From IMG/VR virus record IMGVR_UViG_3300020172_001601, positions 276,342 to 340,341 of that record: DNA of 64,000 nt; one strand, written 5' to 3'. This document shows, piece by piece, positions 5,207 to 17,645 of this stretch (position 1 is the first letter of the stretch; the number at the start of each line of letters is the position of its first letter). The notes below the pieces were generated by a model that did not search any database, was not told where the DNA came from, and saw only the letters and a list, made by a program, of their open reading frames with translations. Both the position numbers and the translations under genes were made by a program.

Positions 5207-5431
5207 ATGATGAGCATTGAACGACAACTTGTGAAGGGAGTAACGACGACTGATGTTGCCGAAGTCGTCAAGGTCAATGAGTGCATTCGCTACATTGAAT
5301 CTTGCGGCTGGTTGTTGAAGCAACGTGCCAGGGGCTATTACTACTTTCGCAACGAAAACGCCAATGAAGGTCAGCGAGACATGACTTTTTCCTTGGCAGA
5401 ACTTCGGGAGGCATACCACAATGGATGGTAA
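5207..5431 (+). CDS. hypothetical protein
   Basis: GGGAG RBS after the repeat at 5151. Confidence 0.65.
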   Translation: MMSIERQLVKGVTTTDVAEVVKVNECIRYIESCGWLLKQRARGYYYFRNENANEGQRDMTFSLAELREAYHNGW

Positions 5432-5627
5432 AGTCAAAATAAGTCACAACTATTGGTGGGAAAACGCAGTGTATTACAGGCGTTCCATCTGCGGCGGCAA
5501 TATTCAGGTCTGGAACGGTCGAATATGGACTGATGCTGCCGAGTCCTGACTTATACTGACTATTGCATACCCTTCTCCATAGGGAGTATGGGGAAGAAAG
5601 TCAGGTCTATTGTACCCTAGCCGGTGT

Positions 5628-5930
5628 AATCGCAAATTACAACACCCAGCACGGGTGGAACGCCGAGAGCCACAGGAGTAAGCACAGAAAGCATCCTCGC
5701 TGCGAAAACAATCGAGGATCGACCCGGAATAAGCCGGTCAGACAGAGTGTGAAGGCAAGAGGGTAAGCCCCTCCCACAATATATCACTCTGAATCAGTGT
5801 GGCCACACTGAGTCTGATCGAACGAAGAAGGGCAGTGCCGAAACGACTGGACGGGCGAAAGTCAGTCACTTGCTGTTGCACAGTGCATCGAAGACCGAAG
5901 GGGACGCCCTTCGGTTTTTCTTTTTTCATT
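5628..5930 (+). ncRNA. candidate structured non-coding RNA filling one repeat unit
   Basis: No RBS-led ORF; nested stems (ATCCTCG/CGAGGAT, CAGAGTG/CACTCTG, TCAGAC/GTCTGA, 18-bp palindrome 5794-5811); ends in a terminator. Confidence 0.5.
5895..5927 (+). terminator. intrinsic terminator
   Basis: ACCGAAGGG-ACG-CCCTTCGGT plus T tract. Confidence 0.85.
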
Positions 5931-5984
5931 TTGTTTAGGTCTATTGTACCCTAGCTGGCACAACCCCTAACGAAAGGCAATGCG

Positions 5985-6173
5985 ATGAACGAACAAGAAT
6001 GGCTGGAAGCATTCAATGCCGAGTTCCTGCGTAAAACCGGCATCACATGGGCAGACGGTGGGCTGGAAGATCAGGACGCCATCAATCGCTACTTCCCGGA
6101 AGACGTGAAAGACGCTGTTCTCCAGCACATGGAGAAATACGACTTGGACGACGTGACCCAACTGTGGGCATAG
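5985..6173 (+). CDS. small acidic hypothetical protein
   Basis: The stop is the repeat TAG. Confidence 0.75.
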   Translation: MNEQEWLEAFNAEFLRKTGITWADGGLEDQDAINRYFPEDVKDAVLQHMEKYDLDDVTQLWA

Positions 6174-6192
6174 GTCCAGTGTACCCTATTGG

Positions 6193-6324
6193 GTGTAATC
6201 GACCCGGCAACGCCCGAAAGATTCTAGGCAAGTACGGCGTAACCGTGACATTCCGATCATCCTGTTCACCGGCCTGCGGGTCAAAGGGGATAGAGAGTCG
6301 GGTCGATTACATTCTTTTTCTTTT
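6193..6324 (+). ncRNA. candidate structured RNA or leader closed by a 16-bp stem
   Basis: 6193-6208 pairs with 6297-6312 (2 G-U), followed by a T tract. Confidence 0.45.
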
Positions 6325-6337
6325 AGGAGAACCTGCG

Positions 6338-6502
6338 GTGAAGAAAAAATACCTTATTGCTCTGCCTTCTTTCCCTAATTCCAAGGGATTCAATCATCGA
6401 ACCATTCTTGTCAGTGCAACCGACAAGAACGATGCCGTTAGCCTTGCCCGGCATTTGCGTCCGGGTGAAAACATTGGCGACATCAAGGAAGTGAACTACT
6501 AG
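6338..6502 (+). CDS. small hypothetical protein
   Basis: AGGAG RBS, GTG start; the stop is the repeat TAG. Confidence 0.65.
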   Translation: MKKKYLIALPSFPNSKGFNHRTILVSATDKNDAVSLARHLRPGENIGDIKEVNY

Positions 6503-6558
6503 GTCCAGTGTACCCTAGTGGGTGTAACGATCACTCAACCCCTGCGAAAGAAACGACA

Positions 6559-6990
6559 ATGGACAACCTCACGAAACTTGCGATTTCCAAGGCTCTGGAA
6601 AAGGACACGAAGAACTTCAAGGCCACGCCGGGAGTTCACGACATCGACACCACGATCACCCTGCGAGTCAAAGGCACGGTGAAGAAGGGTGCGGATTCGG
6701 ATTACACGCCGACCGTGGACATTCCGCTCCTGCCGACCTTGGCACTCGTCATGGAGAAGGCTGGCTTCATGCGGGAACGGGCAAAGGAATTGCTGATCGA
6801 AGCAATGACGGAAGCCCTCGAACTCAGCACCAAGGGCGAAGAGTTCGTTGCCGACCGTGTGAAGAACATCGACGAAGCGATGGCGCACGTCCGGGAAGTC
6901 ACCGGGGCCTTGCCGAAGAAGACCAAGAGCGGGGCAACGAACGTCACCGTGACGGTCGAAGAAGTCGCTCCGGTCGAAGTCGGTGCCTAA
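6559..6990 (+). CDS. hypothetical protein
   Basis: 143 aa, strong codon bias, followed by a terminator. Confidence 0.85.
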   Translation: MDNLTKLAISKALEKDTKNFKATPGVHDIDTTITLRVKGTVKKGADSDYTPTVDIPLLPTLALVMEKAGFMRERAKELLIEAMTEALELSTKGEEFVADRVKNIDEAMAHVREVTGALPKKTKSGATNVTVTVEEVAPVEVGA

Positions 6991-6998
6991 CACTGACC

Positions 6999-7034
6999 GC
7001 ACGGCAACACTGACAATGTTGCCGTGCTTTTTGT
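6999..7034 (+). terminator. intrinsic terminator
   Basis: GCACGGCAACA...TGTTGCCGTGC plus T tract. Confidence 0.8.
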
Positions 7035-7096
7035 TGGTCGTTGTTAGGTCTAGTGTACCCTATTGGGTGTAACGAACCCCAACCTGCGAGAATAAA

Positions 7097-7429
7097 ATGA
7101 AAACTGCGACCATCCCGCAACGCAATCAACGCCTGTACAAGTGCTGGAACGGCGAACTGGAAACAGTGCTGTTCCGTGAGCAATCAATCTCCGAAGGGGC
7201 GTTTGCCGAAACGTGGCTAGTGTTCGACCCGAAGGACAGCCGCCGCATTCGTTGCAGCATTGGCAGCTACTTCACCACGCCTTACTTGGCATGGAAGGCC
7301 GAACTCAAGAGCTACCAAGACGGCCTGAAGGCCCAACGGGTGGCACTGAAGAAGGCACGGGAAGAGATCGTCACCACGAAGGCCACCATTGCCCGGCTCA
7401 AGGACATGGTTGCCCGCTCAAGCACATAA
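7097..7429 (+). CDS. hypothetical protein with C-terminal coiled coil
   Basis: ORF directly after the repeat at 7045. Confidence 0.75.
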   Translation: MKTATIPQRNQRLYKCWNGELETVLFREQSISEGAFAETWLVFDPKDSRRIRCSIGSYFTTPYLAWKAELKSYQDGLKAQRVALKKAREEIVTTKATIARLKDMVARSST

Positions 7430-7439
7430 GGAAAGAACA

Positions 7440-7673
7440 ATGGCACGGCCTCAAGCATACGACCCGCAAGAGGGTTACAAGTATCAAATCCTGACCCGCA
7501 ATCCAGCGTATGGCAGAGCATGGGAGCATTGCGACTATGCGAAGGACAAGGACGAGAAAAACCACTTGATCGGCGAATATCGCTTGGCCTATGGTGCCGG
7601 GTGGGAATTCAAGGTCATCACGTTGCCCGTCAAGTATTGGCCGAAGAGGTCCAGTGTACCCTTGATGGTGTAA
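7440..7673 (+). CDS. hypothetical protein
   Basis: AAGGA RBS; C-terminal RSSVPLMV is encoded by the repeat at 7646. Confidence 0.7.
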   Translation: MARPQAYDPQEGYKYQILTRNPAYGRAWEHCDYAKDKDEKNHLIGEYRLAYGAGWEFKVITLPVKYWPKRSSVPLMV

Positions 7674-7697
7674 CCAACACCCTGCGAGGACAAGACA

Positions 7698-7928
7698 ATG
7701 ATTAGCCGTGTGCAAGTATTTGAAACCAAGGGCAAGCAGTTCCCGACCTTGAAGAAGGCAATTGACTTCCGGGAGGGGCTGATTGAAGAGTTCATTCGGA
7801 AGCTGCCAGGGTTCGATCAAATGCGACACAAGGACCGCATTGCCTTCATTCAATCCATCATCGACAACCGTGAGGTTCTGGTGGACTTGTTTGACTACAA
7901 CGAAATTCTGGACGAAGACGAAGAATAA
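7698..7928 (+). CDS. hypothetical protein
   Basis: GAGGA RBS. Confidence 0.75.
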   Translation: MISRVQVFETKGKQFPTLKKAIDFREGLIEEFIRKLPGFDQMRHKDRIAFIQSIIDNREVLVDLFDYNEILDEDEE

Positions 7929-7937
7929 AGAGGATCA

Positions 7938-8100
7938 TTCAGGTCTGTGAGCAGCGGGGTAACTGGCAGGGAGGCATCCTGTCAGCCTGAATCGAGCGAT
8001 GGTAAGGGCCAGCGAGGGGGCTGGACATTCGACTGTATTAGGTTCCAGCCCTGATGCGACCGAATGCCCCTCGCTGGCACCTGCCTGCATTCAAACCAAG
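7938..8100 (+). ncRNA. candidate pseudoknotted RNA
   Basis: 12-bp stem 8008-8019/8067-8078 enclosing crossed pairings GCTGGA/TCCAGC and CATTCG/CGAATG. Confidence 0.4.
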
Positions 8101-8165
8101 GGTACAAATGACCTTACGTCTATTGTACCCTAGTGGGTGTAACAAACAACAAGAAAAGGAACACA

Positions 8166-8327
8166 ATGAACCCTGCCCTGCAAGCTGCTTTGATTACACT
8201 CGTTCAAGTCATTGTGAAGCTGGAGCCGCATCAATTGGCTGCGGCCCTTGACGAAATCGACCTGAGCGATGAAGGGTTCGAGGAAGAACTCAATATTGTG
8301 AAGCAAGCCATCAAGTGGCAGGATTAG
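8166..8327 (+). CDS. small hypothetical protein
   Basis: AAGGA RBS; the stop is the repeat TAG. Confidence 0.7.
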   Translation: MNPALQAALITLVQVIVKLEPHQLAAALDEIDLSDEGFEEELNIVKQAIKWQD

Positions 8328-8380
8328 GTCCAGTGTACCCTAGTGGGTGTAACGAATAACAATCATCAAGGAAACCGATC

Positions 8381-8584
8381 ATGGCTCGCAAGACCAAAGA
8401 AGAAAAACGAATCGAAGCCGCTGTCGATGCCGCCTTCAGCAAGGTGGGCAACCGTCGCCAGTTCAACATCTTCGACCTGAGCAAGATTCAAGCCGCTGGT
8501 GTGGCTGCTGGCAAGGCCGGGGAGGACATTGAAGCCGCCGTGAGCAAAGCCTGCGATCAATACGAGATCAAAGAAGCAGCGTAG
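8381..8584 (+). CDS. small hypothetical protein
   Basis: AAGGA RBS; the stop is the repeat TAG. Confidence 0.8.
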   Translation: MARKTKEEKRIEAAVDAAFSKVGNRRQFNIFDLSKIQAAGVAAGKAGEDIEAAVSKACDQYEIKEAA

Positions 8585-8634
8585 GGCCAGTGTACCCTAG
8601 TGGGTGTAACGAACAAAACTAATGCGAGACACTC

Positions 8635-9072
8635 ATGAACACCTGCAAAACCTGCAAATCTTGGAATGATGGCATTTGTGAATTGGCTGATACGGTCACA
8701 GGGCCTAAATTGTTTGACATTGTTGTTAGGGTTGCCGACGATCACGGACTTGAAACATCATTGAGAACAGGTCCAGACTTCGGCTGCGTTCATCATTCAA
8801 GCCCTGCCGTGCGACTTGGCACGTTGAACGTAGAGACTGATTGGGATTTCAGTCTTGAATTGAATGGCACTGTTTACAGCGACAGCGAGTTTTCGATTGA
8901 TATTGATTCGATGGATCAATTGGAATCAATCCAAGTTATGGGGCCATTCGGTTCACCGTCTGGCGGCAAACAATGGGAAATCCTTGCAGCTTTGGAAGCA
9001 ATCAAGGCAAATCCTAGTGAGTTCTTTTCTAATCAGGGCGGCAACCGTGGGGCAATGTGGCATCCGAAATAG
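8635..9072 (+). CDS. hypothetical protein with Cys-rich N-terminus
   Basis: CKTC...C...FGCVH; the stop is the repeat TAG. Confidence 0.75.
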   Translation: MNTCKTCKSWNDGICELADTVTGPKLFDIVVRVADDHGLETSLRTGPDFGCVHHSSPAVRLGTLNVETDWDFSLELNGTVYSDSEFSIDIDSMDQLESIQVMGPFGSPSGGKQWEILAALEAIKANPSEFFSNQGGNRGAMWHPK

Positions 9073-9107
9073 CTCCAGTGTACCCTGGTGGGTAAGGAGA
9101 TCAAACC

Positions 9108-9401
9108 ATGCTGACAACTGCGGAACGAATTGAACAAGCGACAGCTTACGGCGTAGGCACCAAAGCCTATGTTGACACCTTCGGGGGAATGGTCCCCTGT
9201 GTGGTCACGGAAATTCACAAGCCGAACGCCAATGGCATTGTCATCGGCCACGACGAATTGACCGTGCGAATTGAAGAAACCCGTGGGGGATATACGAAAG
9301 GCGAGATCGTCACACGGTCAGCCGCATACACTCCCCCACGAAAGCATCGTATCCTGCGGGGATACAGCTACCGAATCAACACGGCGTACAAGTACGTCTA
9401 G
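9108..9401 (+). CDS. hypothetical protein
   Basis: AAGGAG RBS; stop lies inside the repeat at 9393. Confidence 0.8.
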   Translation: MLTTAERIEQATAYGVGTKAYVDTFGGMVPCVVTEIHKPNANGIVIGHDELTVRIEETRGGYTKGEIVTRSAAYTPPRKHRILRGYSYRINTAYKYV

Positions 9402-9418
9402 TGTACCCTACATGGCAA

Positions 9419-9749
9419 CACGGTATGGCTGCTCAAGTGGTGTTGCAGCATTGCTTGAGCATAACACGAGGAGAGAAAAACCAATGGGCAACTAATTCCC
9501 CGATGATGACAAATAGGCGATGCAACAAGCCTTGATCGGACGCAATCGTGCTGCAATACGATTGAACAAGACAAGAAACGACTGCAAGACCTTGCTGTTT
9601 AGGGGCGACCATACGGAATGTCGCAAAACTTAGCCGTGCCGAATTGGTCAGTGCGCAAAGCAGAGAAAACCAGCACCAGCTACCACTGGTGAAAGGCATC
9701 GGTAGAGCAGGTTGGAGTCCTGCAAATCTGGTTTTCTCTGCTTTGGGCA
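9419..9749 (+). ncRNA. candidate structured non-coding RNA filling one repeat unit
   Basis: No credible ORF; hairpin 9430-9461; perfect 18-bp stem 9656-9673/9728-9745 enclosing two hairpins. Confidence 0.5.
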
Positions 9750-9805
9750 TAGGTCTAGTGTACCCTAGTGTGTGTAACGAACACTCAACCCTGCGAGACA
9801 AGAAC

Positions 9806-10171
9806 ATGGCCGACTTGAAAGAAAAGATTGCTGAGTTTGTGAAGGCCGCTGACGAAGTGTCTGCCGCTTATTGGGAGCGACAGAAATTCACCTTCGCCAA
9901 GCCGACGCAACACCGTGCCGACTTCATCAGCGACAAATGGGTGCGTGTCGTGTCTCTGGACGTGCCGCATGAAGGCCCGCCAGTCGTGTCGTCGGTCTAT
10001 GCCTTCATCGCCCTGCAAGACGGCCACACGAAGACGCTGGGAGCAATCAAGGCGGGCGACATTCACAAGCCTGCCGGGTTCAAGGCCCCTGCCAAGCACG
10101 CACGGGGCAACGTCTTCGAGGATGACTTCCGCAAGGCTATCCAGCCGAACGGCATCGTTTACTTGAAATAA
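9806..10171 (+). CDS. hypothetical phage protein (GDIHKPAGFKAPAKHARGN motif)
   Basis: ORF after the repeat at 9750; the motif resembles one I recall from other phage hypothetical proteins. Confidence 0.85.
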   Translation: MADLKEKIAEFVKAADEVSAAYWERQKFTFAKPTQHRADFISDKWVRVVSLDVPHEGPPVVSSVYAFIALQDGHTKTLGAIKAGDIHKPAGFKAPAKHARGNVFEDDFRKAIQPNGIVYLK

Positions 10172-10303
10172 TACAACGCAGACTAGGCCAGTCTGCGGGG
10201 GAGCCAACGAGCGGCTATGCCAAGCAGGAAACTCCCCTGAAATCACAGGTCCAGTGTACCCTGGTGGGTGTGAATAACACCCACCACTTCTAAGGAATGC
10301 GAG

Positions 10304-10531
10304 TTGACTTACCAAGAATTGAAAGCAAAGGTCAGTGCAGCACTTGGCGACGTTGGATTTTCCATCGAAGCGACGGACGACGGCCAGTTGGTCATTTATA
10401 CCGACTTGAAAGAAGTCGAAGATCAGGACGAACTGGAGAACTACGAGCCGACGAATGAACCCTTGGAATCATTGGACGACTTTCTGAGAGAAGAGTTGGG
10501 CGACAAAGACGCTTCCCTGTTTCTCAAGTAG
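10304..10531 (+). CDS. acidic hypothetical protein
   Basis: AAGGA RBS, TTG start; the stop is the repeat TAG. Confidence 0.7.
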   Translation: MTYQELKAKVSAALGDVGFSIEATDDGQLVIYTDLKEVEDQDELENYEPTNEPLESLDDFLREELGDKDASLFLK

Positions 10532-10585
10532 GTCCAGTGTACCCTAGTGGGTGTAACGAACAACCTCAACACGGAGAACTCTGCG

Positions 10586-10816
10586 ATGGCTATTACGCTG
10601 ACCCCTTCCTATGGTCGTGACTACAAGAACGGCAAAGAAGTCCAAGAAGCCTGGGACGCTGGCAAGGACTTCACGATCAACTCCATCGGCCACCCGGACG
10701 ATGGGCGGCAGATCAACAAGCAGGACGCCGAACGTGAGGGCGGCACCTTCAACATCCGGTACAAAAAACTGACCCAGATCAAGGTCATCAAGGTCAAGAA
10801 GGTCGCTGCGGCTTAG
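10586..10816 (+). CDS. hypothetical protein (LTPSYGRDYK motif)
   Basis: GGAG RBS; the stop is the repeat TAG. Confidence 0.85.
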   Translation: MAITLTPSYGRDYKNGKEVQEAWDAGKDFTINSIGHPDDGRQINKQDAEREGGTFNIRYKKLTQIKVIKVKKVAAA

Positions 10817-10842
10817 GTCCAGTGTACCTTACACAGTGTAAC

Positions 10843-11053
10843 GCCTCCCAAACATCGGCCTTGGGCAAGCCAATCAATCAGAATAAAGGAACCCCTTCCC
10901 ATGAATGTCTGAAGTCCGCTAACTCCCCGGCGTAGTCATCCACGTTAGAGCGGGGCGGGACTGCAAAGCGATGGCCGCACGTCAGCAATGGGCAGCATTG
11001 TGCTGGCTGACGTGTGAATGAAGTGCCTCCCAAACATTGGCCTTGGGCAAGCC
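10843..11053 (+). repeat. pair of 29-bp direct repeats in a non-coding unit
   Basis: GCCTCCCAAACAT(C/T)GGCCTTGGGCAAGCC at 10843-10871 and 11025-11053. Confidence 0.9.
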
Positions 11054-11067
11054 GAAAGCAAATGCGT

Positions 11068-11100
11068 AGGGCAGGACCAACCTGCCCTTTTTTTGTTTTT
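11068..11100 (+). terminator. intrinsic terminator
   Basis: AGGGCAGG-ACCAA-CCTGCCCT plus T tract. Confidence 0.85.
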
Positions 11101-11149
11101 GTTTGTGTAGGTCTATTGTACCCTAGAGGGTGTAACAAGCGAACAACAT

Positions 11150-11287
11150 GGCGGCGTAGCTCAACTGGCTAGAGCAACCATCATTATCGTAGCGATTGAT
11201 CGGGGGTCCACGGTCAATGCGGCCAACGTGTGTACAGCGTTGGTTTGAGAGGATGGGAAGACGGGGGTTCGATGCCCTCCGCTGTCT
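11150..11287 (+). ncRNA. tRNA-like RNA with the anticodon loop replaced by a ~70-nt insert
   Basis: Acceptor GGCGGCG/CGCTGTC, TA, D arm GCTC-AACTGGCTA-GAGC, stem CCATC/GATGG, 5-nt variable loop, T arm GGGGG-TTCGATG-CCCTC; no encoded CCA. Confidence 0.8.
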
Positions 11288-11402
11288 GCTTACACTGTAG
11301 GGCATTTGCCCGAACAACGAGGCGTCAGAACACGCCTACAACCCCGAAAGGGGAGAGAGTGTAAGGTAGCCGTAGTGTACCCTAGTGGGCAGGAGAACAA
11401 CA

Positions 11403-11561
11403 ATGCGAAAAACTGAAGGGGCAACCAAAGCCCACGCCTCTGTCGGGTATCACAAACACCTTCGACCATTCGGCAAGCGACTGGCGAACAAAGCCACTCG
11501 CAAGAATGGCAAGCGTAGCACCAGTGTACCCTATGGGGCAGGAGACAAACATGGAAATTGA
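11403..11561 (+). CDS. small basic protein
   Basis: AGGAG RBS; MRKTEGATKAHASVGYHKHLRPFGKRLANK...; reads through the repeat at 11516; below the ORF-track cut-off. Confidence 0.55.
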   Translation: MRKTEGATKAHASVGYHKHLRPFGKRLANKATRKNGKRSTSVPYGAGDKHGN

Positions 11562-11922
11562 AGACGTGCGAAATACCCGATCCATGAGAATGGACCCGGA
11601 AAGCCCTGCGGAATACGACGAGATGGACGCCATCACCGCTGGCCCCAATGGTATGAAATTGATGCCAGTGTTCAGCGGTGAGATGTTTCAACAGTCCGTT
11701 GCCTATCCCGTCATCGTGGAAGCATGGGACAAGAAGAACAGCGGACGCCACAAACGCCGATGGGAAGCGACATTCACCCAAGCCGAACGGAACAAGATCA
11801 GCCGGTATTATGGCCGGTTTTACCGCTGGTATCTGGTCAGCGGCACGCCCAAACGTGTGTCACTGCAATTGAACACCTTGACCCTCCTGCAAAGGGCAGT
11901 GAACTTCTTCGCTGAATGTTAG
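11551..11922 (+). CDS. hypothetical protein
   Basis: AGGAG RBS; the stop is the repeat TAG. Confidence 0.8.
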   Translation: MEIEDVRNTRSMRMDPESPAEYDEMDAITAGPNGMKLMPVFSGEMFQQSVAYPVIVEAWDKKNSGRHKRRWEATFTQAERNKISRYYGRFYRWYLVSGTPKRVSLQLNTLTLLQRAVNFFAEC

Positions 11923-11943
11923 GGCTAGTGTACCCTAGAGGGC

Positions 11944-12237
11944 ATGATGAAAGACGCATACGGAAACGATCAAGTATATCTGGTCCAGCCCACAACTCTG
12001 GACTATGAGATCAGCTATGGTGGCGATGGTGTCAAAACATGCCAAGAGGGACGCTATCGACACTATTTCACTGCCAGTGCTGGCGGTTTGTCGGGTAGCA
12101 TTAGAATTCAATTGAACCGAGTCAGCGCCGAACGGTTTGCTGCCTATAACGGCCTGCGGTTGATAACCGACGTTGAACGTGAAGAAATTCAAGAAAGGTG
12201 GAGCGTCAGAGTGCCGGATTGGTCCAGTGTACCCTAG
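11944..12237 (+). CDS. hypothetical protein
   Basis: Starts 6 nt after the 18-bp repeat core; ends WSSVP* inside the next repeat. Confidence 0.65.
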   Translation: MMKDAYGNDQVYLVQPTTLDYEISYGGDGVKTCQEGRYRHYFTASAGGLSGSIRIQLNRVSAERFAAYNGLRLITDVEREEIQERWSVRVPDWSSVP

Positions 12238-12274
12238 ACGGTGTAACGATCACTCAACCCTGCGGAGAATGACA

Positions 12275-12526
12275 ATGGTTCAATTGAAAGTCGTGGCTGT
12301 GTCGAGCAACCACAATAGTTTCGGCCTGCGAAACATGATCCTCATCGGGGACAATGGCGAAGGCTGGCAAGCTGCGGCCAATGACCTGAACGTGAAGCCG
12401 AAGGATACCATCCTGCGGATACCCGAAGGGCAGGACATTCCCACGTTCCTGACGCTGCAATCTTTCGAGATTCCTTCACAACTGGCCGACCCGCCTGCCG
12501 AACTATTGAAAGAAGTTTGGGGCTAG
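12275..12526 (+). CDS. hypothetical protein
   Basis: GGAG RBS; the stop is the repeat TAG. Confidence 0.8.
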   Translation: MVQLKVVAVSSNHNSFGLRNMILIGDNGEGWQAAANDLNVKPKDTILRIPEGQDIPTFLTLQSFEIPSQLADPPAELLKEVWG

Positions 12527-12584
12527 GTCCAGTGTACCCTAGAGGGTGTAAGGAACACTTCAGTCCTCTGCGAAAGGCAATGCG

Positions 12585-12920
12585 ATGTTGAGCCACAAAA
12601 TTGCGATTTACATTCCTTCCACTGTCAACGGCAATCAGCCCGCCCCGGTTGATATGATCGAACGGTGGGTGCGGGCCAGCAAGATCAAGCTGGCCAACCT
12701 GTTCGGTGGGTTTACGACCTACAACGGGCAAGGGGGATGGTACTCGCCCGAACACGGTTTGATCGAAGAGAACGTGATTATCGTTCAAGCGTTCACCGAT
12801 CAAGAGGGGCTGACCAAACTGGACAAAGTGAACGAACTGGCGAAGGAAATCGCCAGCGACATGGGCCAGGAAATGGTGTCGGTCGAAGTCGATGGAACAC
12901 TCAACTTCGTGACAGCGTAA
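12585..12920 (+). CDS. DUF3574-like / PII-fold-like hypothetical protein
   Basis: FGGFTTYNGQGGW...E...GQEMV pattern. Confidence 0.55.
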   Translation: MLSHKIAIYIPSTVNGNQPAPVDMIERWVRASKIKLANLFGGFTTYNGQGGWYSPEHGLIEENVIIVQAFTDQEGLTKLDKVNELAKEIASDMGQEMVSVEVDGTLNFVTA

Positions 12921-12925
12921 GGCAG

Positions 12926-12955
12926 GGACGGGCAGTAATGCCCGTCTTTTTTTCT
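12926..12955 (+). terminator. intrinsic terminator
   Basis: GACGGGCA-GTAA-TGCCCGTC plus T tract. Confidence 0.85.
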
Positions 12956-12988
12956 GAGTTTGTGTAGGTCTATTGTACCCTAGAGAAC

Positions 12989-13255
12989 ATGAGAGTCAGC
13001 AACACATTATTGATTTCCCTGTTTTATGAACCGGGAACGTCACATATTGCCGGAATTGAAAACCGAGCAATACAAGCGATGGAATTGGGGATGATTTCAG
13101 AACTCCCCAAGATCACTGTGGCGAAAAGTGAGAAGACACCATTCTGGCACTTGAAGCTGGAAGTCAAGGATGAAGATCGGCCATTCTGGTTCGGTTTTTA
13201 CTTAGGGAAAGACTTCTGCATCAACAATCGACCAATCACTGTCGGCTGTGATTAG
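12989..13255 (+). CDS. hypothetical protein
   Basis: Starts 6 nt after the repeat core; the stop is the repeat TAG. Confidence 0.7.
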   Translation: MRVSNTLLISLFYEPGTSHIAGIENRAIQAMELGMISELPKITVAKSEKTPFWHLKLEVKDEDRPFWFGFYLGKDFCINNRPITVGCD

Positions 13256-13309
13256 GTCCAGTGTACCCTAGAGGGTGTAAGGAACACTTAACCCCCTGCG
13301 AGATACGCC

Positions 13310-13495
13310 ATGCCGAAGAAAATGGATCATGCCGCCTACCAACGTGGTCTGCGGTCGAAGTCGGTTGCTCAACTCCAATTTATTGCGAAGGATGCCAACG
13401 AAGCCGCCACGGTTAACCCGCAAGGCGAAAACGCTGGCTACTACGCCGACGAAGTGCATTATGCACTCGCCGAACTCAAACGTCGTCAAGGATGA
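13310..13495 (+). CDS. small hypothetical protein
   Basis: 61 aa after the repeat at 13253. Confidence 0.75.
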   Translation: MPKKMDHAAYQRGLRSKSVAQLQFIAKDANEAATVNPQGENAGYYADEVHYALAELKRRQG

Positions 13496-13671
13496 AAAAC
13501 ATGAAACTGGCAAGCATAGCGGTCGCATTCCTCCTGTTGGCGGGATGCGCCGCTCCTCCGAGACATTGGGAAGCTCCCCGTGAGCATTACCACAAGGAAT
13601 TAAGCGTCGAAGTCCGGGAAAGCGGCGATGGCCGTCCCCAAGTCGTTGCTACGTTCAAAATCACCAACTAG
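13492..13671 (+). CDS. small lipoprotein
   Basis: MKNMKLASIAVAFLLLAG-C lipobox; ATGA overlap; the stop is the repeat TAG; 59 aa, absent from the ORF track. Confidence 0.75.
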   Translation: MKNMKLASIAVAFLLLAGCAAPPRHWEAPREHYHKELSVEVRESGDGRPQVVATFKITN

Positions 13672-13725
13672 GTCCAGTGTACCCTATATGGTGTGAAGGA
13701 CACCAACAAAAAGGGAAACCAAGCC

Positions 13726-13911
13726 ATGCACACAACGACCGCACGAAAGGACAACAAGAAAACAACAATCGTTCTGCCGCCGCTTCCACCGTGGCAAGTG
13801 GCGAAGGGACACCAACAACACCGTGGCGGGGCAGGCACTCACGCCGACCGCCGCACGAACCGTCAACGGACACGAGCCGCCCAACAACGGGCAGCAGTGT
13901 CAGATGACTGA
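13726..13911 (+). CDS. small basic protein
   Basis: Arg-rich AGTHADRRTNRQRTR. Confidence 0.65.
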   Translation: MHTTTARKDNKKTTIVLPPLPPWQVAKGHQQHRGGAGTHADRRTNRQRTRAAQQRAAVSDD

Positions 13912-14093
13912 AAGGCACCATCATGTGCAAACTAAACTCTAAGGCAAGGAGGCTGCAAAAGGCAAGACGTTGGGCTGAAAAGATGCTGATCGACCTGAAG
14001 ACGTGGCCCGGTGGACTTGAAGACTTCGCCGAAGCACTTAGGTCCAGTGTACCCTATATGGTGTGAAGAACACTCAACCCTGCGAGATCAATC

Positions 14094-14321
14094 ATGAAGA
14101 CCGAACCGAAGACGTTCCGCTTGGGCAGCAACGACATGGTTTCTGCCCCCGGCATCCTCAAGTGGGCCATGAATGGCTACAAATTCAAACGTGACCGCAA
14201 GAAGATGGTCAACGTGATGAAAGCGTGGGAGGGCCTGACCGATGCCCAATGGGGCAAGGTGCTGGCGGGTGAAATCCCCCACACCATCGAAGGCGATGTC
14301 GTGGTAATCACCATCGAATGA
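14094..14321 (+). CDS. hypothetical protein
   Basis: ORF between a repeat and a terminator. Confidence 0.8.
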   Translation: MKTEPKTFRLGSNDMVSAPGILKWAMNGYKFKRDRKKMVNVMKAWEGLTDAQWGKVLAGEIPHTIEGDVVVITIE

Positions 14322-14325
14322 CAAC

Positions 14326-14356
14326 AAAGGGCAGCAAGTCGCTGCCCTTTTCTTTT
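14326..14356 (+). terminator. intrinsic terminator (same hairpin as at 16169)
   Basis: AAAGGGCAGC-AAGTC-GCTGCCCTTT plus T tract. Confidence 0.85.
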
Positions 14357-14414
14357 ATGTTTTTGTGTAGGTCTATTGTACCCTAGTGGGTGTCACACAA
14401 AGGAGACAATTGCG

Positions 14415-14762
14415 ATGATTACCAAAGTATCTGCTGACACGTTTCACAATGATGTTTACCACCACGATGGCCCTGTCGTCGTGACCTTCGGCTATACGGG
14501 CTGCGGCCCATGCCGTTCCTTGCAACCCAGCCTTGAGAAGCTGGCCGAAACTGGCGTCAAGGTCGTCAAGGTCGATATTGTCGATGACCCTGACATTGCC
14601 ACGCACTTCGGCATCAGCAGCGTGCCGACAACCCTGTTCTTCGCCCGTGGCGAACCACGATTGTCGTTCAATGGCGTTGCCAACGTCAAGAAGCTGCAAG
14701 CACTGCTGGCTGAAGCCGTGGCCGATGGCGAGAAGTCGCCCGCCGACCACGCCCATGCCTAG
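14415..14762 (+). CDS. thioredoxin-family protein
   Basis: VVVTFGYTGCGPC, SSVPT cis-Pro motif; the stop is the repeat TAG. Confidence 0.88.
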   Translation: MITKVSADTFHNDVYHHDGPVVVTFGYTGCGPCRSLQPSLEKLAETGVKVVKVDIVDDPDIATHFGISSVPTTLFFARGEPRLSFNGVANVKKLQALLAEAVADGEKSPADHAHA

Positions 14763-14816
14763 CCCTAGTGTACCCTATAGGGTGTGATGGAACGAAACCT
14801 TCAACGGAGAACTGCG

Positions 14817-15056
14817 ATGGCTAACGGTTGGCATGAAGACTTTGAAGACGAAACCTTCCCGCCCGAACTGCACGAGCAGGAAGACTGGAGCGAACTCGAA
14901 GAAGACTTCGACGACGAAGAGTTCGACGATGACGAATTCGAGGACGATGACGGCGAACTGGCCCGTGACCTGATCCTTGAACGTCAGGAACTCGAAGACT
15001 TCGAGGGCCTTGATCCCTTCGAGGATCGCTACGACTACGAAGGCGACGGCTTCTAA
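14817..15056 (+). CDS. extremely acidic small protein
   Basis: 38 of 79 residues are D/E, no Lys; GGAG RBS. Confidence 0.8.
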   Translation: MANGWHEDFEDETFPPELHEQEDWSELEEDFDDEEFDDDEFEDDDGELARDLILERQELEDFEGLDPFEDRYDYEGDGF

Positions 15057-15065
15057 GGGCAACGA

Positions 15066-15100
15066 AGGACAGGGAAAGCCTCCCTGTCCTTTTTCTTTCT
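15066..15100 (+). terminator. intrinsic terminator
   Basis: AGGACAGGGA-AAGCC-TCCCTGTCCT plus T tract. Confidence 0.85.
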
Positions 15101-15172
15101 GAGTTTGTGTAGGTCTATTGTACCCTAGTGGGTGTGTCGAAGAGAACGAAACCTGTCCAACGGAGAACTGCA

Positions 15173-15358
15173 ATGGTGACTGCGACCATCGAAGGCAACG
15201 AACTCGTGATTCGCCTTCCCCTCAACACGCCCCGGCCCAGCGCCACGGGCAAGACGCTCGTGGTTGCCACGAGCAGCGGCAACAAGGCCACCGAAGCCGA
15301 AGTCAACGGGCAAAAGGTAGTCGTCGGCGTCAACGCCTACATCTACCCGCCCAAATAG
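15173..15358 (+). CDS. small hypothetical protein (SATGKTLVVAT motif)
   Basis: GGAG RBS, strong codon bias. Confidence 0.8.
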   Translation: MVTATIEGNELVIRLPLNTPRPSATGKTLVVATSSGNKATEAEVNGQKVVVGVNAYIYPPK

Positions 15359-15438
15359 TCAACAAAAGGCAACACTAGGGTACGTCCAGTGTACCCTAGT
15401 GTGTGTTGGGATCAATCACCTTCACTCAAGGATCGACC

Positions 15439-15684
15439 ATGCGAGTATTGGCTAAGACGTTCGGCTGGCTTGTCGTCAGTGGGCTTATCATCTTCATCAG
15501 CAACCTGAGCGCCGGTGTCGATTGGAAAGTCGCCCTGATCGGTGCGGCTGTTGCGAAGATCGGCACGACCATTGCCTACTTCTTCTACGAAATCGGCTTC
15601 GAGAAGGCGTGGAAACGTCAGCCAAAGGCAACGACGGTCACGGCAACAACGGCATCGGCAACGCCATGCCCTTGCCCGGCTTAG
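15439..15684 (+). CDS. DUF2061-like membrane protein
   Basis: R..AKT..W, two hydrophobic segments, YFFYE...W; the stop is the repeat TAG. Confidence 0.6.
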   Translation: MRVLAKTFGWLVVSGLIIFISNLSAGVDWKVALIGAAVAKIGTTIAYFFYEIGFEKAWKRQPKATTVTATTASATPCPCPA

Positions 15685-15752
15685 GGCTAGTGTACCCTAG
15701 AGGGTGTCCAACACGGACGAACGACAACCCCCTGCGAATGAGGAACTGAGTT

Positions 15753-16160
15753 ATGGCCACTACTGAAGTCAAGCTGGTATCGGAAATCATCGAAGCTGTC
15801 CCCGGCGTCAAGCGTGCGTTCCACGTCTTCACGCCAGCCCTTCAGCATCGCCTTGAGAACAACGCCAGCAACCTGCCGGTGATGGCCCTGCGGTCTTCAA
15901 TCCACAACTACGGCAAGATGAAGCTGTACGCTCGCATCGAATGCCTTGGGCCGTCCAGCCTTGACCCGCTGTTCGGCAACCCACTGCCCGGCACGGGTGG
16001 CCGTGGCGTGGCAATCATGTTCACCGAATTCCCCCTTCGGGTATGGTATCCCGAAGGGCAAAAGCCCCCGGTCGTTGACACGCCGGACGGACGCAACCCG
16101 AAGGACATACTTGAGGAAGTCAAGCTCAAGTATGAACTCGCCTTCCACGACGATTTCTAA
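15753..16160 (+). CDS. hypothetical protein
   Basis: GAGGA RBS, followed by a terminator. Confidence 0.85.
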   Translation: MATTEVKLVSEIIEAVPGVKRAFHVFTPALQHRLENNASNLPVMALRSSIHNYGKMKLYARIECLGPSSLDPLFGNPLPGTGGRGVAIMFTEFPLRVWYPEGQKPPVVDTPDGRNPKDILEEVKLKYELAFHDDF

Positions 16161-16168
16161 TCGTCAGG

Positions 16169-16200
16169 AAAGGGCAGCAAGTCGCTGCCCTTTCTTTTTG
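16169..16200 (+). terminator. intrinsic terminator
   Basis: AAAGGGCAGC-AAGTC-GCTGCCCTTT plus T tract. Confidence 0.85.
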
Positions 16201-16514
16201 TTTATGTTTGTGTAGGTCTATTGTACCCTAGAGGGCAAGGAGATCGGCACATGACCTTTCGAGAGTGGTATCGGATGACCGAACGTGAGATTCGGTGGAA
16301 TCGCAGTTTCCTGTATCGTGTCTTCAACAAGATCGGACTCGCATGATTCGCAAAGCTCTGGCCTTCGTGGTCAACGTCTTCAACTTCCTCGTTCCTGCGA
16401 ACCAAGGGCCGCAACCGACGCCGCCCAACTACTTCGGCCCCTGCCCGTAGTAGGTCAAGTGTACCCTAGTGAGTGCGGGCAATGTCGCCCGCCTCACTCT
16501 TGGGGTTTTACAAA

Positions 16515-16655
16515 ATGAAAAAGAAACATCGCAACGACAAGAACCACGGGCGCAACGGCTGGGTCGGTGGCAACCCACGCTATGCGGGCAAGGGATTCAA
16601 GAAGGGCGACCGAGCCAAGGCAAAGGCCGAAGCCCGTAGGTCCAGTGTACCCTAG
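16515..16655 (+). CDS. small basic protein
   Basis: Lys/Arg-rich; ends RSSVP* inside a repeat. Confidence 0.55.
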   Translation: MKKKHRNDKNHGRNGWVGGNPRYAGKGFKKGDRAKAKAEARRSSVP

Positions 16656-16729
16656 TGAGCTAGTGTACCCTATGGTGCATAGTGCATAGTGCATAGCATA
16701 GACTATGCACTTCTTTATTCAAAGAAGCA

Positions 16730-16809
16730 TAGGGTACAATAGCCCTAACAATGTTGCATAATTAAAAACAAAACAATTATTCGAGAAAACATTGGGTACA
16801 ATAGACCTA
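16730..16809 (-). repeat. two inverted copies of the array element
   Basis: Reverse complement of 16730-16747 is TAGGGCTATTGTACCCTA; of 16792-16809 is TAGGTCTATTGTACCCAA. Confidence 0.92.
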
Positions 16810-16984
16810 CCCACCCCCTCCCCCACGCAATGACTGTGTTTTCTTTTTAATGTCCAAAAGAAAAATCCTGGCCGGGGAAAACAAAAATCGCAAATCGGCA
16901 ATTTTGAGTATGTCCTGCCACGATTTTGAGTTTTTGTGTGAACTCATCCTGAAAAAATCGCCGGGGCAAAAATTCTGGCCCTGG

Positions 16985-17578
16985 CTAACCTTTTGATCGC
17001 TCGGCTTTGTTTAAGTAGTATGCCACCTTCTCCTCAATAGTGGCCCACATTCCTGGCTTGGCCCGGAACTCTTCCTCAATGACATCATGATCCCACCAAT
17101 ATGTCTTGTGAACTGGCACCTGAAGTTCCACATCCTGCACTTCTTCGTCTTCTGGAAAGATTGCGTCATGTAAAGGCAACAAGTCTGGTGGTAGTCCAGC
17201 AACTTTCGTCAGTGTGTCGGCAATTAGACTTTGCCGCTTCAATTCACAATAGGCTTCTGGATTGGTCCTGTAGCCATTCATGGTATTGGGACTGTTCTCC
17301 TCGACAACCCACCCGATGGCAATCTTGCGAAACTTCTCTTCGACCGGAGGCACTTCAGTAGTTTCTTTGATGATTCGCTTTAAGACGATATGCTTGTCTG
17401 CATCCTTGAAGTATTCATCGTAGTCTTCGTTAGGTTTGCCAAAGTGCCGCTTGTCAAATTCCCGTGGTGTGACTTGATTTGAGTAATCGCTATATGGAGA
17501 TTCTGGCACTGAACCAATAGTGCCGCAACCATAAGAAGTCACAGTATTAGATGGCGGGAACCCTTTTAATATTGCCAT
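16985..17578 (-). CDS. hypothetical protein
   Basis: GGAG RBS before MAILKG; 197 aa. Confidence 0.8.
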   Translation of the reverse strand: MAILKGFPPSNTVTSYGCGTIGSVPESPYSDYSNQVTPREFDKRHFGKPNEDYDEYFKDADKHIVLKRIIKETTEVPPVEEKFRKIAIGWVVEENSPNTMNGYRTNPEAYCELKRQSLIADTLTKVAGLPPDLLPLHDAIFPEDEEVQDVELQVPVHKTYWWDHDVIEEEFRAKPGMWATIEEKVAYYLNKAERSKG

Positions 17579-17645
17579 ATCTTCTCCCAAGGTAGAGCAA
17601 TGGCTGGGGAGAAGCCCCAGCCCTGCTATGCGAAAGCATTATCAA

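What the first reader, a model, noticed from the sequence alone, without database searches (positions are those of the whole stretch)
16637..16984. Array terminus: element polarity flips, then A-tract-rich DNA
Seen: two overlapping forward copies (16637, ~16655), three GTGCATA repeats plus an inverted one, and two reverse-strand copies (16730-16747, 16792-16809) facing the array with no gene between. These are followed by a C-run, repeated A/T tracts and GCCGGGG motifs before convergent minus-strand genes. Inference: head-to-head copies without cargo are hard to explain as simple promoters and point to a protein-bound DNA site, such as an origin, packaging or terminus site, injection stop, or the array's insertion point.
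Basis: partly seen in the sequence, partly recalled or inferred. Interest (0 to 1): 0.68.

Follow-up and report, generated by a model that had tools for sequence, protein, structure and literature searches.

The report
Conserved end module of phage promoter array
The flagged 350 bases are the conserved right-hand end of a 28-kb array of about 60 promoter-like repeats in a huge freshwater phage: a gene-less stretch kept across nine related phages that probably marks where array transcription ends and may also serve DNA replication or packaging, though neither role has been tested.

Summary
The window is the last 64 kb of a 340-kb phage contig. About 60 same-strand copies of a 26-bp promoter-like element fill 27.7 kb and stop at 16675.

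Anatomy of the terminus:
- a cassette-loss scar (two abutting forward copies);
- a last forward copy with no gene, followed by a hairpin;
- reverse copy 1;
- a 43-bp box that is 79% A+T;
- reverse copy 2;
- a C-run;
- an 11-mer that occurs once in the contig, followed by a T-run;
- A-tract DNA;
- the terminator of the convergent gene.

Nine related lineages (37.7-55.3% G+C where measured) keep the AT box and the T-run; eight also keep the 11-mer in register. Six keep a clear reverse copy 2, and its upstream half follows each lineage's own promoter variant. Reverse copy 1 is reverse, forward or absent depending on lineage.

GC skew, predicted curvature, Rfam, RNA covariation and small-ORF conservation gave nothing. 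No RNA runs or raw reads were available. No contig ends at the module.

Best reading (0.38): a transcription-coupled, protein-bound DNA site, with gene-less promoters firing into an unwinding box, as at the T4 oriF/oriG and T7 origin and packaging promoters. Main rival (0.30): a pure transcription boundary. The function is inferred, not shown.

The parts
1..16675 (+). Right-hand 16.7 kb of a 27.7-kb array (genome 265,343-293,005) of about 60 co-oriented promoter-like elements, each in front of a small ORFan cassette
   Evidence: 57 of 61 elements have an ORF of at least 30 codons starting a median 34 nt downstream. Seven strong + strand terminators are each followed by the CTAT variant of the element. 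Array G+C is about 0.53 against about 0.47 elsewhere.
16636..16655 (+). Penultimate forward element, complete; it abuts the next copy with no cassette between (cassette-loss scar)
   Evidence: G001/L060 hold a 286-bp cassette and L098 a different cassette in exactly this slot.
16660..16675 (+). Last forward element (core 16664-16672), with no gene behind it; a gene-less last forward copy is present in the 7 lineages of the reverse-copy clade
   Evidence: no ORF. Relatives.
16688..16711 (+). Terminal hairpin (9-bp stem) built from the GTGCATA repeats, followed by a T-rich tail 16712-16720; the array's last stem-loop
   Evidence: Flagged as terminator-like. Folding gives -15.8 kcal/mol, z -2.45. 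G001 carries a compensatory change (TAG/CTA to TGG/CCA). L098, L111, L116 and L122 have hairpins of unrelated sequence at the same place.
16728..16749 (-). Reverse copy 1 of the element (core exact); orientation is not conserved across the family
   Evidence: Reverse in window, G001 and L098; forward in L111 and L120; absent in L116 and L122. Replaced by 14 nt in one low-depth contig of run X5.
16750..16792 (.). AT box: 43 bp, 79% A+T; a 40-bp window here ties the contig-wide maximum of 80% A+T; its sequence is conserved in all 9 lineages
   Evidence: 99.99th percentile; about 9 sites in 340 kb reach 80%. Alignment A5 shows invariant columns. The RNA of either strand is unstructured (z about 0).
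16793..16810 (-). Reverse copy 2, facing the AT box; its upstream half is a 17/17 match to the post-terminator promoter variant; its core ends CCCAA, not CCCTA
   Evidence: Clearly present in window, G001, L098, L111, L116 and L120; degenerate in L122. Each copy matches its own lineage's variant. The otherwise near-invariant T is missing in 5 of 6 clear copies.
16811..16826 (+). C-run (a C- or G-rich run in every lineage)
16826..16848 (+). 11-mer CGCAATGACTG (16826-16836) followed by a T-run (16839-16848); it occurs once in the 340-kb contig
   Evidence: Invariant except W at position 4 across the 7 aligned lineages. L120 and L122 each differ at one base. Only one such site exists in the contig. 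A T-run follows 2-8 nt later in all 9 lineages.
16849..16917 (.). Conserved A-tract block containing a 32-nt stretch (16878-16909) identical in window, G001, L111 and L098
   Evidence: Window 16748-16929 is 88.5% identical to L098, against 75-86% for most flanking segments and 88.8% for the last cassette. Predicted curvature reaches only about the 95th percentile.
16950..16985 (-). Weak hairpin plus T-run on the minus strand: terminator of the convergent gene; contains the second GCCGGGG
   Evidence: window -11.9 kcal/mol, z -1.4; the L098 counterpart is strong, -24.5 kcal/mol, z -5.1. L116 also has a hairpin with a T-run here.
16985..17590 (-). Convergent 201-aa ORF with no family match; the right-hand neighbour of the module differs between lineages
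   Evidence: G001 has a 3.2-kb T5orf172 and DNA-methylase island here. L098 has an unrelated 384-aa gene.

Best explanation
**Shown.** The region is the conserved right-hand end module of a promoter-cassette array in a huge phage. It reads, in order:
- a scar left by loss of the last cassette;
- a last forward promoter-like copy with no gene, followed by a hairpin;
- a roughly 170-bp gene-less module made of an AT-rich box, an inward-facing copy of the array's own element, a C-run, an 11-mer that occurs once in the contig followed by a T-run, and A-tract DNA;
- the terminator of the convergent gene.

**Inferred.** The element is a promoter for a phage-directed transcription machinery. That machinery could be one of the contig's sigma-70-family factors or an unidentified polymerase. 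The gene-less copies are real recognition sites for it.

**Proposed mechanism (inferred, not shown).** The module is a transcription-coupled site where proteins assemble on the DNA. Gene-less promoter copies fire into, or hold polymerase at, the easily melted AT box. This opens the DNA next to conserved protein-binding motifs, either to start DNA replication or to mark the genome for packaging. The replication case would resemble the promoter plus downstream unwinding element of T4 oriF/oriG and the T7 phi1.1A/B origin. The packaging case would resemble my recollection of the T7 phiOR promoter and concatemer-junction pause site. The hairpin and the 11-mer with its T-run would at the same time stop array transcription before it runs antisense into the convergent genes.
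For: **The element behaves as a promoter.**
- 57 of 61 copies sit a median 34 nt upstream of an ORF.
- Seven strong terminators are each followed within about 15 nt by a copy.
- Conservation is contiguous over about 26 bp and strand-specific, and the element occurs only in this block.

**The module is functional.**
- It is as conserved as the best-conserved flanking DNA: 88.5% identical to L098.
- The AT box and T-run are kept in 9 lineages (37.7-55.3% G+C where measured), and the 11-mer in register in 8.
- The 11-mer followed by a T-run occurs only once in the 340-kb contig.
- No ORF is conserved in frame (and reading of the sequences).

**Reverse copy 2 is a recognition site.** Its upstream half changes together with each lineage's own promoter variant. 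Examples are GTAGGTCTAT in the window, GTAGTGTAAT in L098 and CTAGTCTATT in L116.

**The layout is promoter plus unwinding box.**
- Reverse copy 2 always faces the AT box.
- The box ties the contig-wide maximum of A+T over 40 bp.
- Its RNA is unstructured.
- In L111 and L120 a forward and a reverse copy flank the box directly.

**Precedents.**
- The T4 minimal origins are a promoter plus an A+T-rich unwinding element in about 100 bp (PMC3016281).
- The T7 origin consists of the phi1.1A and phi1.1B promoters (PMC12796468).

**Association.** The module travels with the array end while its right-hand neighbours differ in every lineage.
Against: - No transcript, R-loop, read-end or marker-frequency data exist. 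Only assembled contigs were available.
- No GC-skew inflection maps here.
- No RNA polymerase, family-B DNA polymerase or DnaB helicase was detected in the held 69% of the genome. The enzymes the model needs are therefore unidentified.
- Reverse copy 2 lacks the near-invariant T of CCCT in 5 of 6 clear copies and lacks the conserved downstream GNGGGTGT. It may bind without initiating.
- L113 and L117 keep the AT box and 11-mer but show no clear reverse copy.
- The co-variation could come from gene conversion among repeats rather than selection.
- About 8 other sites in the contig are as AT-rich.
- T4 unwinding elements need no specific sequence, whereas this AT box is conserved in sequence.
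Confidence: 0.38

Rival explanations
1. Pure transcription boundary. The hairpin, the sequence-specific 11-mer with its T-run, and an opposing promoter-like copy together stop and insulate array transcription from the convergent genes. The reverse copies make only short antisense RNAs, or act as polymerase roadblocks. There is no role in DNA replication or packaging.
For: - The module always lies exactly between the last forward copy and the convergent genes, with terminators on both flanks.
- An invariant motif followed by a T-run, with no convincing hairpin, recalls the sequence-specific class II stop signals of T7 RNA polymerase: ATCTGTT plus a T-run (10.1101/2021.01.11.426313).
- A structure-conserved, sequence-variable hairpin follows the last forward copy in 6 lineages.
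- Reverse copy 2 lacks the conserved T and the initiation region, as expected for a site that binds without firing.
Against: - A general stop signal should recur at other unit ends, yet the 11-mer occurs once in 340 kb while the array uses ordinary hairpin terminators.
- A boundary does not require three or four separately conserved sequence blocks over 170 bp, or sequence conservation of the AT box.
- The hairpins of L098, L111 and L122 lack a proper T tail.
Confidence: 0.3
2. Packaging recognition site (pac or cos type) for the nearby terminase. The repeated A-tract and GC-rich motifs are terminase-binding sites.
For: - The site occurs once in the contig, is conserved and has several motifs. 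It lies 1.8 kb upstream of the C39-peptidase and terminase gene block.
- The order array, module, variable genes, C39 peptidase, terminase recurs in L111, L117, L122 and L123.
- From my own recollection, not checked here: T7 and T3 packaging involves a gene-less phage promoter and a pause site at the concatemer junction.
Against: - None of about 10 independent contigs ends at or near the module.
- Contig-level data show no pile-up of ends.
- The distance to the terminase varies by kilobases between lineages (3.2 kb inserted in G001, about 4.5 kb in L117).
- Predicted curvature is unremarkable.
- The GCCGGGG motifs are not conserved in L098, L116 or L120.
Confidence: 0.1
3. Small non-coding RNA gene. 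The gene-less last forward promoter would transcribe rightward an RNA of about 165 nt: a 5' hairpin, an AU-rich stretch, the anti-element sequence, a C-run, the 11-mer and a U-run. Alternatively, reverse copy 2 would make a leftward RNA antisense to the last cassette.
For: - A gene-less forward copy precedes the module in the 7 lineages of the reverse-copy clade.
- A T-run closes the conserved stretch in all 9.
- In L111 and L120 no terminator separates the forward copy from the AT box.
Against: - There is no Rfam match.
- Neither strand shows covariation support (1 compensatory pair out of 59 and out of 49 predicted pairs).
- The AU-rich part is unstructured.
- The anti-element matches best the post-terminator promoter variant, which is the variant least likely to be present in RNA.
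- The region upstream of reverse copy 2 is the best-conserved part, which a leftward RNA would not explain.
Confidence: 0.12
4. A relic with no function of its own: leftover inverted cassette boundaries produced by the same repeat-mediated recombination that shuffles the array.
For: - Reverse partial copies also occur inside arrays (window 8098, 15376; genome 265,326; L111 4732).
- The orientation of the copy left of the AT box flips between lineages.
- Recombination at the elements is frequent.
Against: - Position, orientation and lineage-specific sequence of reverse copy 2 are kept in 6 lineages.
- The surrounding non-coding block is as conserved as the best-conserved flanking DNA and persists across a wide range of G+C content.
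Confidence: 0.06
5. Either a T5-type injection-stop signal at the end of a first-entering early region, or an integron-like insertion point for new cassettes.
For: - The array makes up about 6% of the estimated genome (27.7 kb of 340 kb / 0.69). It consists of small ORFan genes and is followed by repeat-rich non-coding DNA. From my own recollection, this resembles the layout of the T5 first-step-transfer region.
- The slot next to the module is empty in the window and holds different cassettes in G001/L111 and in L098.
Against: - The array is internal to the 340-kb contig, and contigs read through both of its boundaries.
- There is no evidence of a physical end.
- Cassette gain and loss occurs all along the array, not preferentially at this end.
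- No tyrosine or serine recombinase is found in the contig.
- The element has no attC-like structure.
Confidence: 0.04

Closest known systems
PeSL (promoter-early stem-loop) cassettes of T4-type phage hyperplastic regions (PMC2839356, PMC4122927)
   Same: - Both are blocks of small ORFan genes.
- In both, each gene is flanked by a repeated promoter, often just after a stem-loop terminator.
- Close relatives differ by insertions, deletions and replacements whose breakpoints lie in the repeats. In the window versus G001, about 8 of 13 right edges lie 8-13 nt before the core.
   Different: - The repeat here is a contiguous, phage-specific element of about 26 bp, not a sigma-70-like early promoter.
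- About 60 copies form one 27.7-kb unidirectional block with raised G+C.
- The PeSL abstracts read here do not mention a conserved terminal module with an inward-facing copy.
[quoted passage not shown]
   Same: A phage-specific promoter with no need for a gene product fires into an A+T-rich stretch of about 40-50 bp, all within about 100 bp.
   Different: - No R-loop or replication data exist here.
- The AT box is conserved in sequence, whereas T4 unwinding elements are not sequence-specific.
- Extra conserved motifs flank it.
- The polymerase or factor is unknown.
T7 gene-less 'replication' promoters and primary origin (phi1.1A/phi1.1B; PMC12796468 citing Romano et al. 1981). phiOL and phiOR are from my own recollection.
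   Same: - Copies of the phage's own promoter without cargo are associated with AT-rich DNA.
- The window, G001 and L098 have two tandem copies pointing the same way.
   Different: - No T7-like polymerase was detected (PF00940).
- The tandem arrangement holds in only 3 of 9 lineages.
- The AT box lies between the copies, not downstream of both.
T7 RNA polymerase class II (sequence-specific) terminator and concatemer-junction pause site (10.1101/2021.01.11.426313)
   Same: A strictly conserved short motif without a convincing hairpin, followed within a few nt by a T-run, on the non-template strand for array transcription. The motif contains CTGT followed by Ts.
   Different: - The core sequence differs (ATGACTG against ATCTGTT).
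- The polymerase type is unknown.
- Termination or pausing has not been tested.
T5 injection stop signal at the end of the first-step-transfer region (my own recollection; not retrieved)
   Same: Repeat- and palindrome-rich non-coding DNA closes a block of early-type ORFan genes.
   Different: The T5 site lies near a physical genome end inside a terminal repeat. Here the array is internal to the contig and no end is evident.

Membership tests
PeSL-type promoter/terminator shuffling cassettes | Repeated promoter motifs, often paired with stem-loop terminators, flanking small non-essential ORFs in a plastic region | tested here: met
   60 elements; 57 of 61 precede ORFs. Seven terminator-plus-element composites. 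The ORFs have no family matches above cut-off.
PeSL-type promoter/terminator shuffling cassettes | Indel and replacement breakpoints between close relatives fall in the repeats | tested here: met
   Window versus G001: most gap edges lie 8-13 nt before or 9-28 nt after a core.
PeSL-type promoter/terminator shuffling cassettes | The promoter is a strong sigma-70-like early promoter | tested here: not met
   The element has no -35/-10 pair. The sigma-70-type scan found 10 sites against 12.4 expected, none at the elements.
PeSL-type promoter/terminator shuffling cassettes | Formation of encapsidated mini-circles by recombination between repeats | not testable with these tools
   Needs PCR or long reads on virion DNA.
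T4 oriF/oriG-type origin | Phage promoter plus an A+T-rich unwinding element within about 100 bp | tested here: met
   Reverse copy 2 (16793-16810) faces the AT box (16750-16792), whose 40-bp A+T content ties the contig maximum of 80%.
T4 oriF/oriG-type origin | Persistent R-loop and origin activity (autonomous, phage-dependent replication) | not testable with these tools
   No RNA or raw reads. GC skew is uninformative because it follows gene strand.
T7 primary origin and gene-less promoters | Single-subunit T7-like RNA polymerase encoded by the phage | tested here: not met
   PF00940 has no hit in the 340-kb contig. The contig is only about 69% of the genome and no control genome rang, so absence is not proven.
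T7 primary origin and gene-less promoters | Two tandem phage promoters followed by an AT-rich region | tested here: inconclusive
   Tandem reverse copies occur in window, G001 and L098 only. L111 and L120 have a convergent pair; L116 has a single copy.
T7 class II terminator / CJ pause | Core ATCTGTT on the non-template strand followed by a T-run, with no hairpin | tested here: not met
   The motif is CGCWATGACTG followed by a T-run. It shares only CTGT plus Ts. The resemblance is to the kind of signal, not its sequence.
Integron (attI/attC cassette array) | Adjacent tyrosine-recombinase integrase and structured attC sites | tested here: not met
   No PF00589 or PF00239 hit in the contig. The element is an unstructured promoter-like site of about 26 bp.
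pac/cos packaging site | Virion DNA ends or a packaging-series start at the site | not testable with these tools
   Only contigs were available. No contig ends here and there is no pile-up of ends.
T5-type injection stop signal | Located at the inner end of the first-entering terminal segment | tested here: inconclusive
   The array is internal to a 340-kb fragment classed as linear, with no end repeats. The physical ends are unknown.

The most novel reading that the evidence does not exclude
The module is a family-wide replication origin and/or packaging-initiation site of a clade of huge freshwater phages, occurring once in the held contig. It would be switched on by gene-less copies of the phage's own early-array promoter firing into an AT-rich box. 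It would be the first cis-acting DNA-metabolism site I am aware of being defined for such uncultured huge phages, and would link their promoter array to genome replication or packaging.
Probability: 0.3. Interest if true: 0.72.

Novelty: new variant of a known kind. Interest (0 to 1): 0.52.

Why it matters
As far as I know, the origins, packaging sites and transcription programmes of huge uncultured phages are essentially unmapped.

- This locus offers a short, alignable, single-copy non-coding landmark kept across lineages from 38% to 55% G+C. It is attached to a 60-copy array of phage-specific promoters.
- If the module is an origin or packaging signal, it gives a handle for building replicons or packaging substrates, and for orienting fragmentary contigs of this clade.
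- If it is only a boundary, it still defines the stop of a large early-gene programme and a possible sequence-specific stop signal.
- The array itself shows that promoter-mediated cassette shuffling, known from T4-type phages, works with a non-sigma-70-type promoter and on a much larger scale.

Tried and rejected
- **Reads.** The one run search found only Logan contigs and no RNA runs. Laying four runs gave fragmentary contigs, joints at the repeats and no pile-up of ends. Termini and start sites therefore remain untested. In run X5, contig depth is 7-9 on the array side against 2.7-4.3 to the right. X2 and X3 show no such step, so I draw no conclusion about a terminal repeat.\n- **GC skew.** Cumulative skew rises almost steadily with gene strand, with no inflection at 293 kb.\n- **Curvature.** The A-tract DNA reaches only about the 95th percentile. 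RNAalifold on both strands shows no covariation.\n- **Small ORFs.**\n - The minus-strand 46-codon ORF 16810-16947 is open over about 29 codons in three close lineages. It is frameshifted or stopped in L098 (after codon 29), L116 and L122, and has no database homologue.\n - The + strand ORF 16850-16996 is not kept in frame in L098.\n - Both were rejected as genes.\n- **Enzymes.** There are no hits for T7-like or multisubunit RNA polymerase, integrase, resolvase, family-B DNA polymerase or DnaB. The 3112-aa ORF has no Pfam, PHROG or PDB match.\n- **Relatives.**\n - Distant terminase relatives (31% identity or less) have no array.\n - The metagenome contigs could not be extended.\n - A DNA search of the phage collection found no relative.\n - L114, L115, L118, L119 and L121 carry the cassette gene in unrelated contexts.\n- **Literature.** A search for the core sequence returned only unrelated papers.
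Full report
**Context.** The window is the last 64 kb of a single 340,341-bp viral contig (window = contig 276,342-340,341). The contig is classed as a linear fragment, about 69% complete.
- It is a huge tailed phage. It encodes a terminase large-subunit domain (19959-20858), a tyrosyl-tRNA synthetase, a CCA-adding enzyme and baseplate wedge proteins.
- Public runs that hold it are freshwater and sediment metagenomes, plus runs labelled with one coded organism.

**The observation.**
- Matches to the core TGTACCCTA, allowing one mismatch, number 51 in the window against 5.7 expected.
- A weight-matrix scan of the whole contig gives 60 forward hits, all between 265,343 and 293,005. Its single reverse hit is at this terminus.
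- Reverse copy 2 is a 17-18-nt exact reverse complement of one promoter variant.
- The short motifs in the A-tract DNA are each 50-100-fold enriched locally.

**What the repeated element is.** Conservation is contiguous over about 26 bp (consensus TAGGTCCAGTGTACCCTAGTGGGTGT).
- 57 of 61 copies have an ORF of at least 30 codons starting a median 34 nt after the core. The exceptions include the two terminal copies.
- Seven strong + strand intrinsic terminators are each followed within about 15 nt by a distinct variant, GTAGGTCTATTGTACCCTA. Transcription must therefore restart there.
- I read the element as a promoter. This is an inference; there are no RNA data.
- It has no sigma-70-type -35/-10 pair.
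- The contig shows no Pfam-detectable RNA polymerase. It does have three to four sigma-70 region-2 matches.
- The array genes have no family matches above cut-off, and array G+C is 0.53 against 0.47 elsewhere.

**Plasticity.** A relative about 90% identical (G001, 42 kb) is syntenic but differs by cassette-sized insertions, deletions and replacements. Their edges mostly lie 8-13 nt before or 9-28 nt after a core. This is the behaviour described for PeSL cassettes of T4-type phages (PMC2839356, PMC4122927). No tyrosine or serine recombinase is present, so homologous exchange between repeats is the likely mechanism.

**Anatomy of the terminus.**
- 16636-16655: complete forward copy.
- 16660-16675: last forward copy. 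Its upstream half is replaced, and no ORF follows either of these two copies.
- 16675-16695: GTGCATA three times.
- 16688-16711: hairpin, followed by a T-rich tail.
- 16728-16749: reverse copy 1.
- 16750-16792: AT box.
- 16793-16810: reverse copy 2, whose core ends CCCAA.
- 16811-16826: C-run.
- 16826-16836: CGCAATGACTG, then a T-run at 16839-16848.
- 16849-16917: A-tract block.
- 16950-16985: weak minus-strand hairpin with a T-run, then the convergent ORF.

**Comparative evidence.** G001 and L060 hold a 286-bp cassette exactly between the two forward copies that abut in the window. L098 holds a different cassette there. The 'overlapping' copies are therefore a cassette-loss scar. A cassette protein 0.5 kb upstream (15753-16157) has 71 homologues. 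Through these and a terminase search I obtained eight further lineages that span the array end:

| Lineage |
|---|
| G001 |
| L098 |
| L111 |
| L113 |
| L116 |
| L117 |
| L120 |
| L122 |

G+C of the loci measured runs from 37.7% (L120) to 55.3% (L122).

Conserved features:
- All nine lineages, counting the window, keep the AT box and a T-run. Eight of them, all but L122, also keep the 11-mer in register with at most one changed base (alignment A5).
- In the held contig the 11-mer with its T-run occurs only once.
- Window 16748-16929 is 88.5% identical to L098. Most flanking segments are 75-86% identical and the last cassette 88.8%.
- Reverse copy 2 is clear in the window, G001, L098, L111, L116 and L120. 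It is degenerate in L122 and not visible in L113 or L117.
- Its upstream half equals each lineage's own post-terminator variant.
- Five of the six clear copies lack the T of CCCT, which about 95% of forward copies carry.

Variable features:
- The copy left of the AT box is reverse in three lineages, forward in L111 and L120, and absent in L116 and L122.
- The hairpin after the last forward copy has a compensatory change in G001 and unrelated sequences in L098, L111, L116 and L122. Only some versions have a T tail.
- The gene to the right of the module differs between lineages. G001 has a 3.2-kb island with a T5orf172-domain gene and a DNA methylase. L098 has an unrelated gene.
- The module therefore travels with the array end.

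- Skew: no signal.
- Curvature: the A-tract DNA reaches about the 95th percentile. The contig-wide maximum lies instead at the array's left boundary (wedge parameters recalled from memory).
- Read ends and antisense 5' ends: not testable, because only contigs were available.
- Contig ends: none of about ten independent contigs ends in the module. This weakly argues against a fixed physical end there.
- Newest cassettes next to the site: the adjacent slot is indeed variable, but so is the whole array.
- New observation: the AT box ties the contig maximum of 80% A+T over 40 bp, one of about nine such sites.

**Non-coding status.** There is no Rfam hit and no covariation on either strand. The AT-box RNA is unstructured. 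The small ORFs are not conserved in frame in the more distant lineages, and the minus-strand one has no homologue.

**Interpretation.**
- Shown: this is a conserved, gene-less, multi-block module that occurs once in the contig, lies at the array end, and contains an inward-facing copy of the lineage's own promoter next to an exceptionally AT-rich box.
- Inferred: the module is a transcription-coupled protein-DNA assembly site.
- The nearest working models are the T4 oriF/oriG minimal origins (a promoter plus an A+T-rich unwinding element; PMC3016281) and the T7 origin promoters phi1.1A/B (PMC12796468). The motif with its T-run recalls sequence-specific class II stops of T7 polymerase in kind, not in sequence.
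- I give this reading 0.38. The rivals are a pure transcription boundary (0.30), a small RNA gene (0.12), a packaging site as sole function (0.10), a relic (0.06), and an injection stop or integron-like point (0.04).
- The co-variation of reverse copy 2 could reflect gene conversion rather than selection, and the enzymes required are unidentified.

**Novelty.**
- The array is a new variant of PeSL-type shuffling: a non-sigma-70 element, about 60 copies, one unidirectional block.
- In the sources I read, I found no description of a conserved terminal module with an inward-facing copy and a motif that occurs once in the contig.
- Its function is open, so I score interest as moderate.

Noticed in passing
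window 1-16675 (genome 265,343-293,005): The array itself: about 60 co-oriented promoter-like elements over 27.7 kb, with G+C 0.53 against 0.47 elsewhere, ORFan cassettes, and two element variants. The CCAG variant is internal; the CTAT variant follows terminators.
   Followed up: partly
genome 264,674-265,343 (locus L107 2674-3343), left boundary of the array: A 550-bp divergent non-coding region holds the contig-wide maximum of predicted curvature (264,738). It carries repeated TGTGTGAAG and TTGCCTTT motifs and 70-75% A+T stretches. The first forward copy follows, with a reverse partial copy back-to-back (265,326).
   Followed up: partly
window 8098-8132 and 15372-15402: Reverse partial copies lie directly upstream of forward copies inside the array. 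At 15372-15402 a perfect 12-bp inverted repeat embeds the promoter core. In G001 the counterpart of 8098 is a full reverse copy.
   Followed up: partly
window 18798-19940 and 19959-20858: The terminase region is two adjacent ORFs in every relative. The second carries the terminase ATPase-type match. The first (380 aa) has no match, and no nuclease domain was identified. This could be a split or interrupted large terminase, or a separate partner gene.
   Followed up: no
L013 14976-18213 (G001): A 3.2-kb island is inserted exactly at the right edge of the module. It holds a T5orf172/MUG113-domain gene, an N6/N4 DNA methylase and three unknown ORFs, and is absent from the window.
   Followed up: partly
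window 11117-11290: An element copy is followed not by an ORF start but by a sequence resembling the 5' half of a tRNA (acceptor and D arm). ARAGORN finds no tRNA, and Rfam gives only a weak tmRNA-like hit at 11239-11280 (E 0.34).
   Followed up: no
genome 48,055; 62,531; 156,410; 197,435: There are three to four sigma-70 region-2 matches in the contig, but no detectable RNA polymerase subunits, family-B DNA polymerase or DnaB helicase in the held 340 kb.
   Followed up: partly
window 36073-45411: A 3112-aa ORF upstream of the baseplate genes has no Pfam, PHROG or PDB sequence match.
   Followed up: partly
window 16682-16745 in run X5: One low-depth contig from runs labelled with a single coded organism replaces the hairpin and reverse copy 1 with 14 nt. 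In that run, contig depth is 2-3 times higher on the array side than to the right of the module.
   Followed up: no
genome 1-200 and 340,142-340,341; L108 1-60: Contig ends fall in tandem repeats (collagen-like GNQG-type coding repeats; a 20-bp unit repeated three times in G005). The contig ends are therefore assembly breaks, not genome ends.
   Followed up: no
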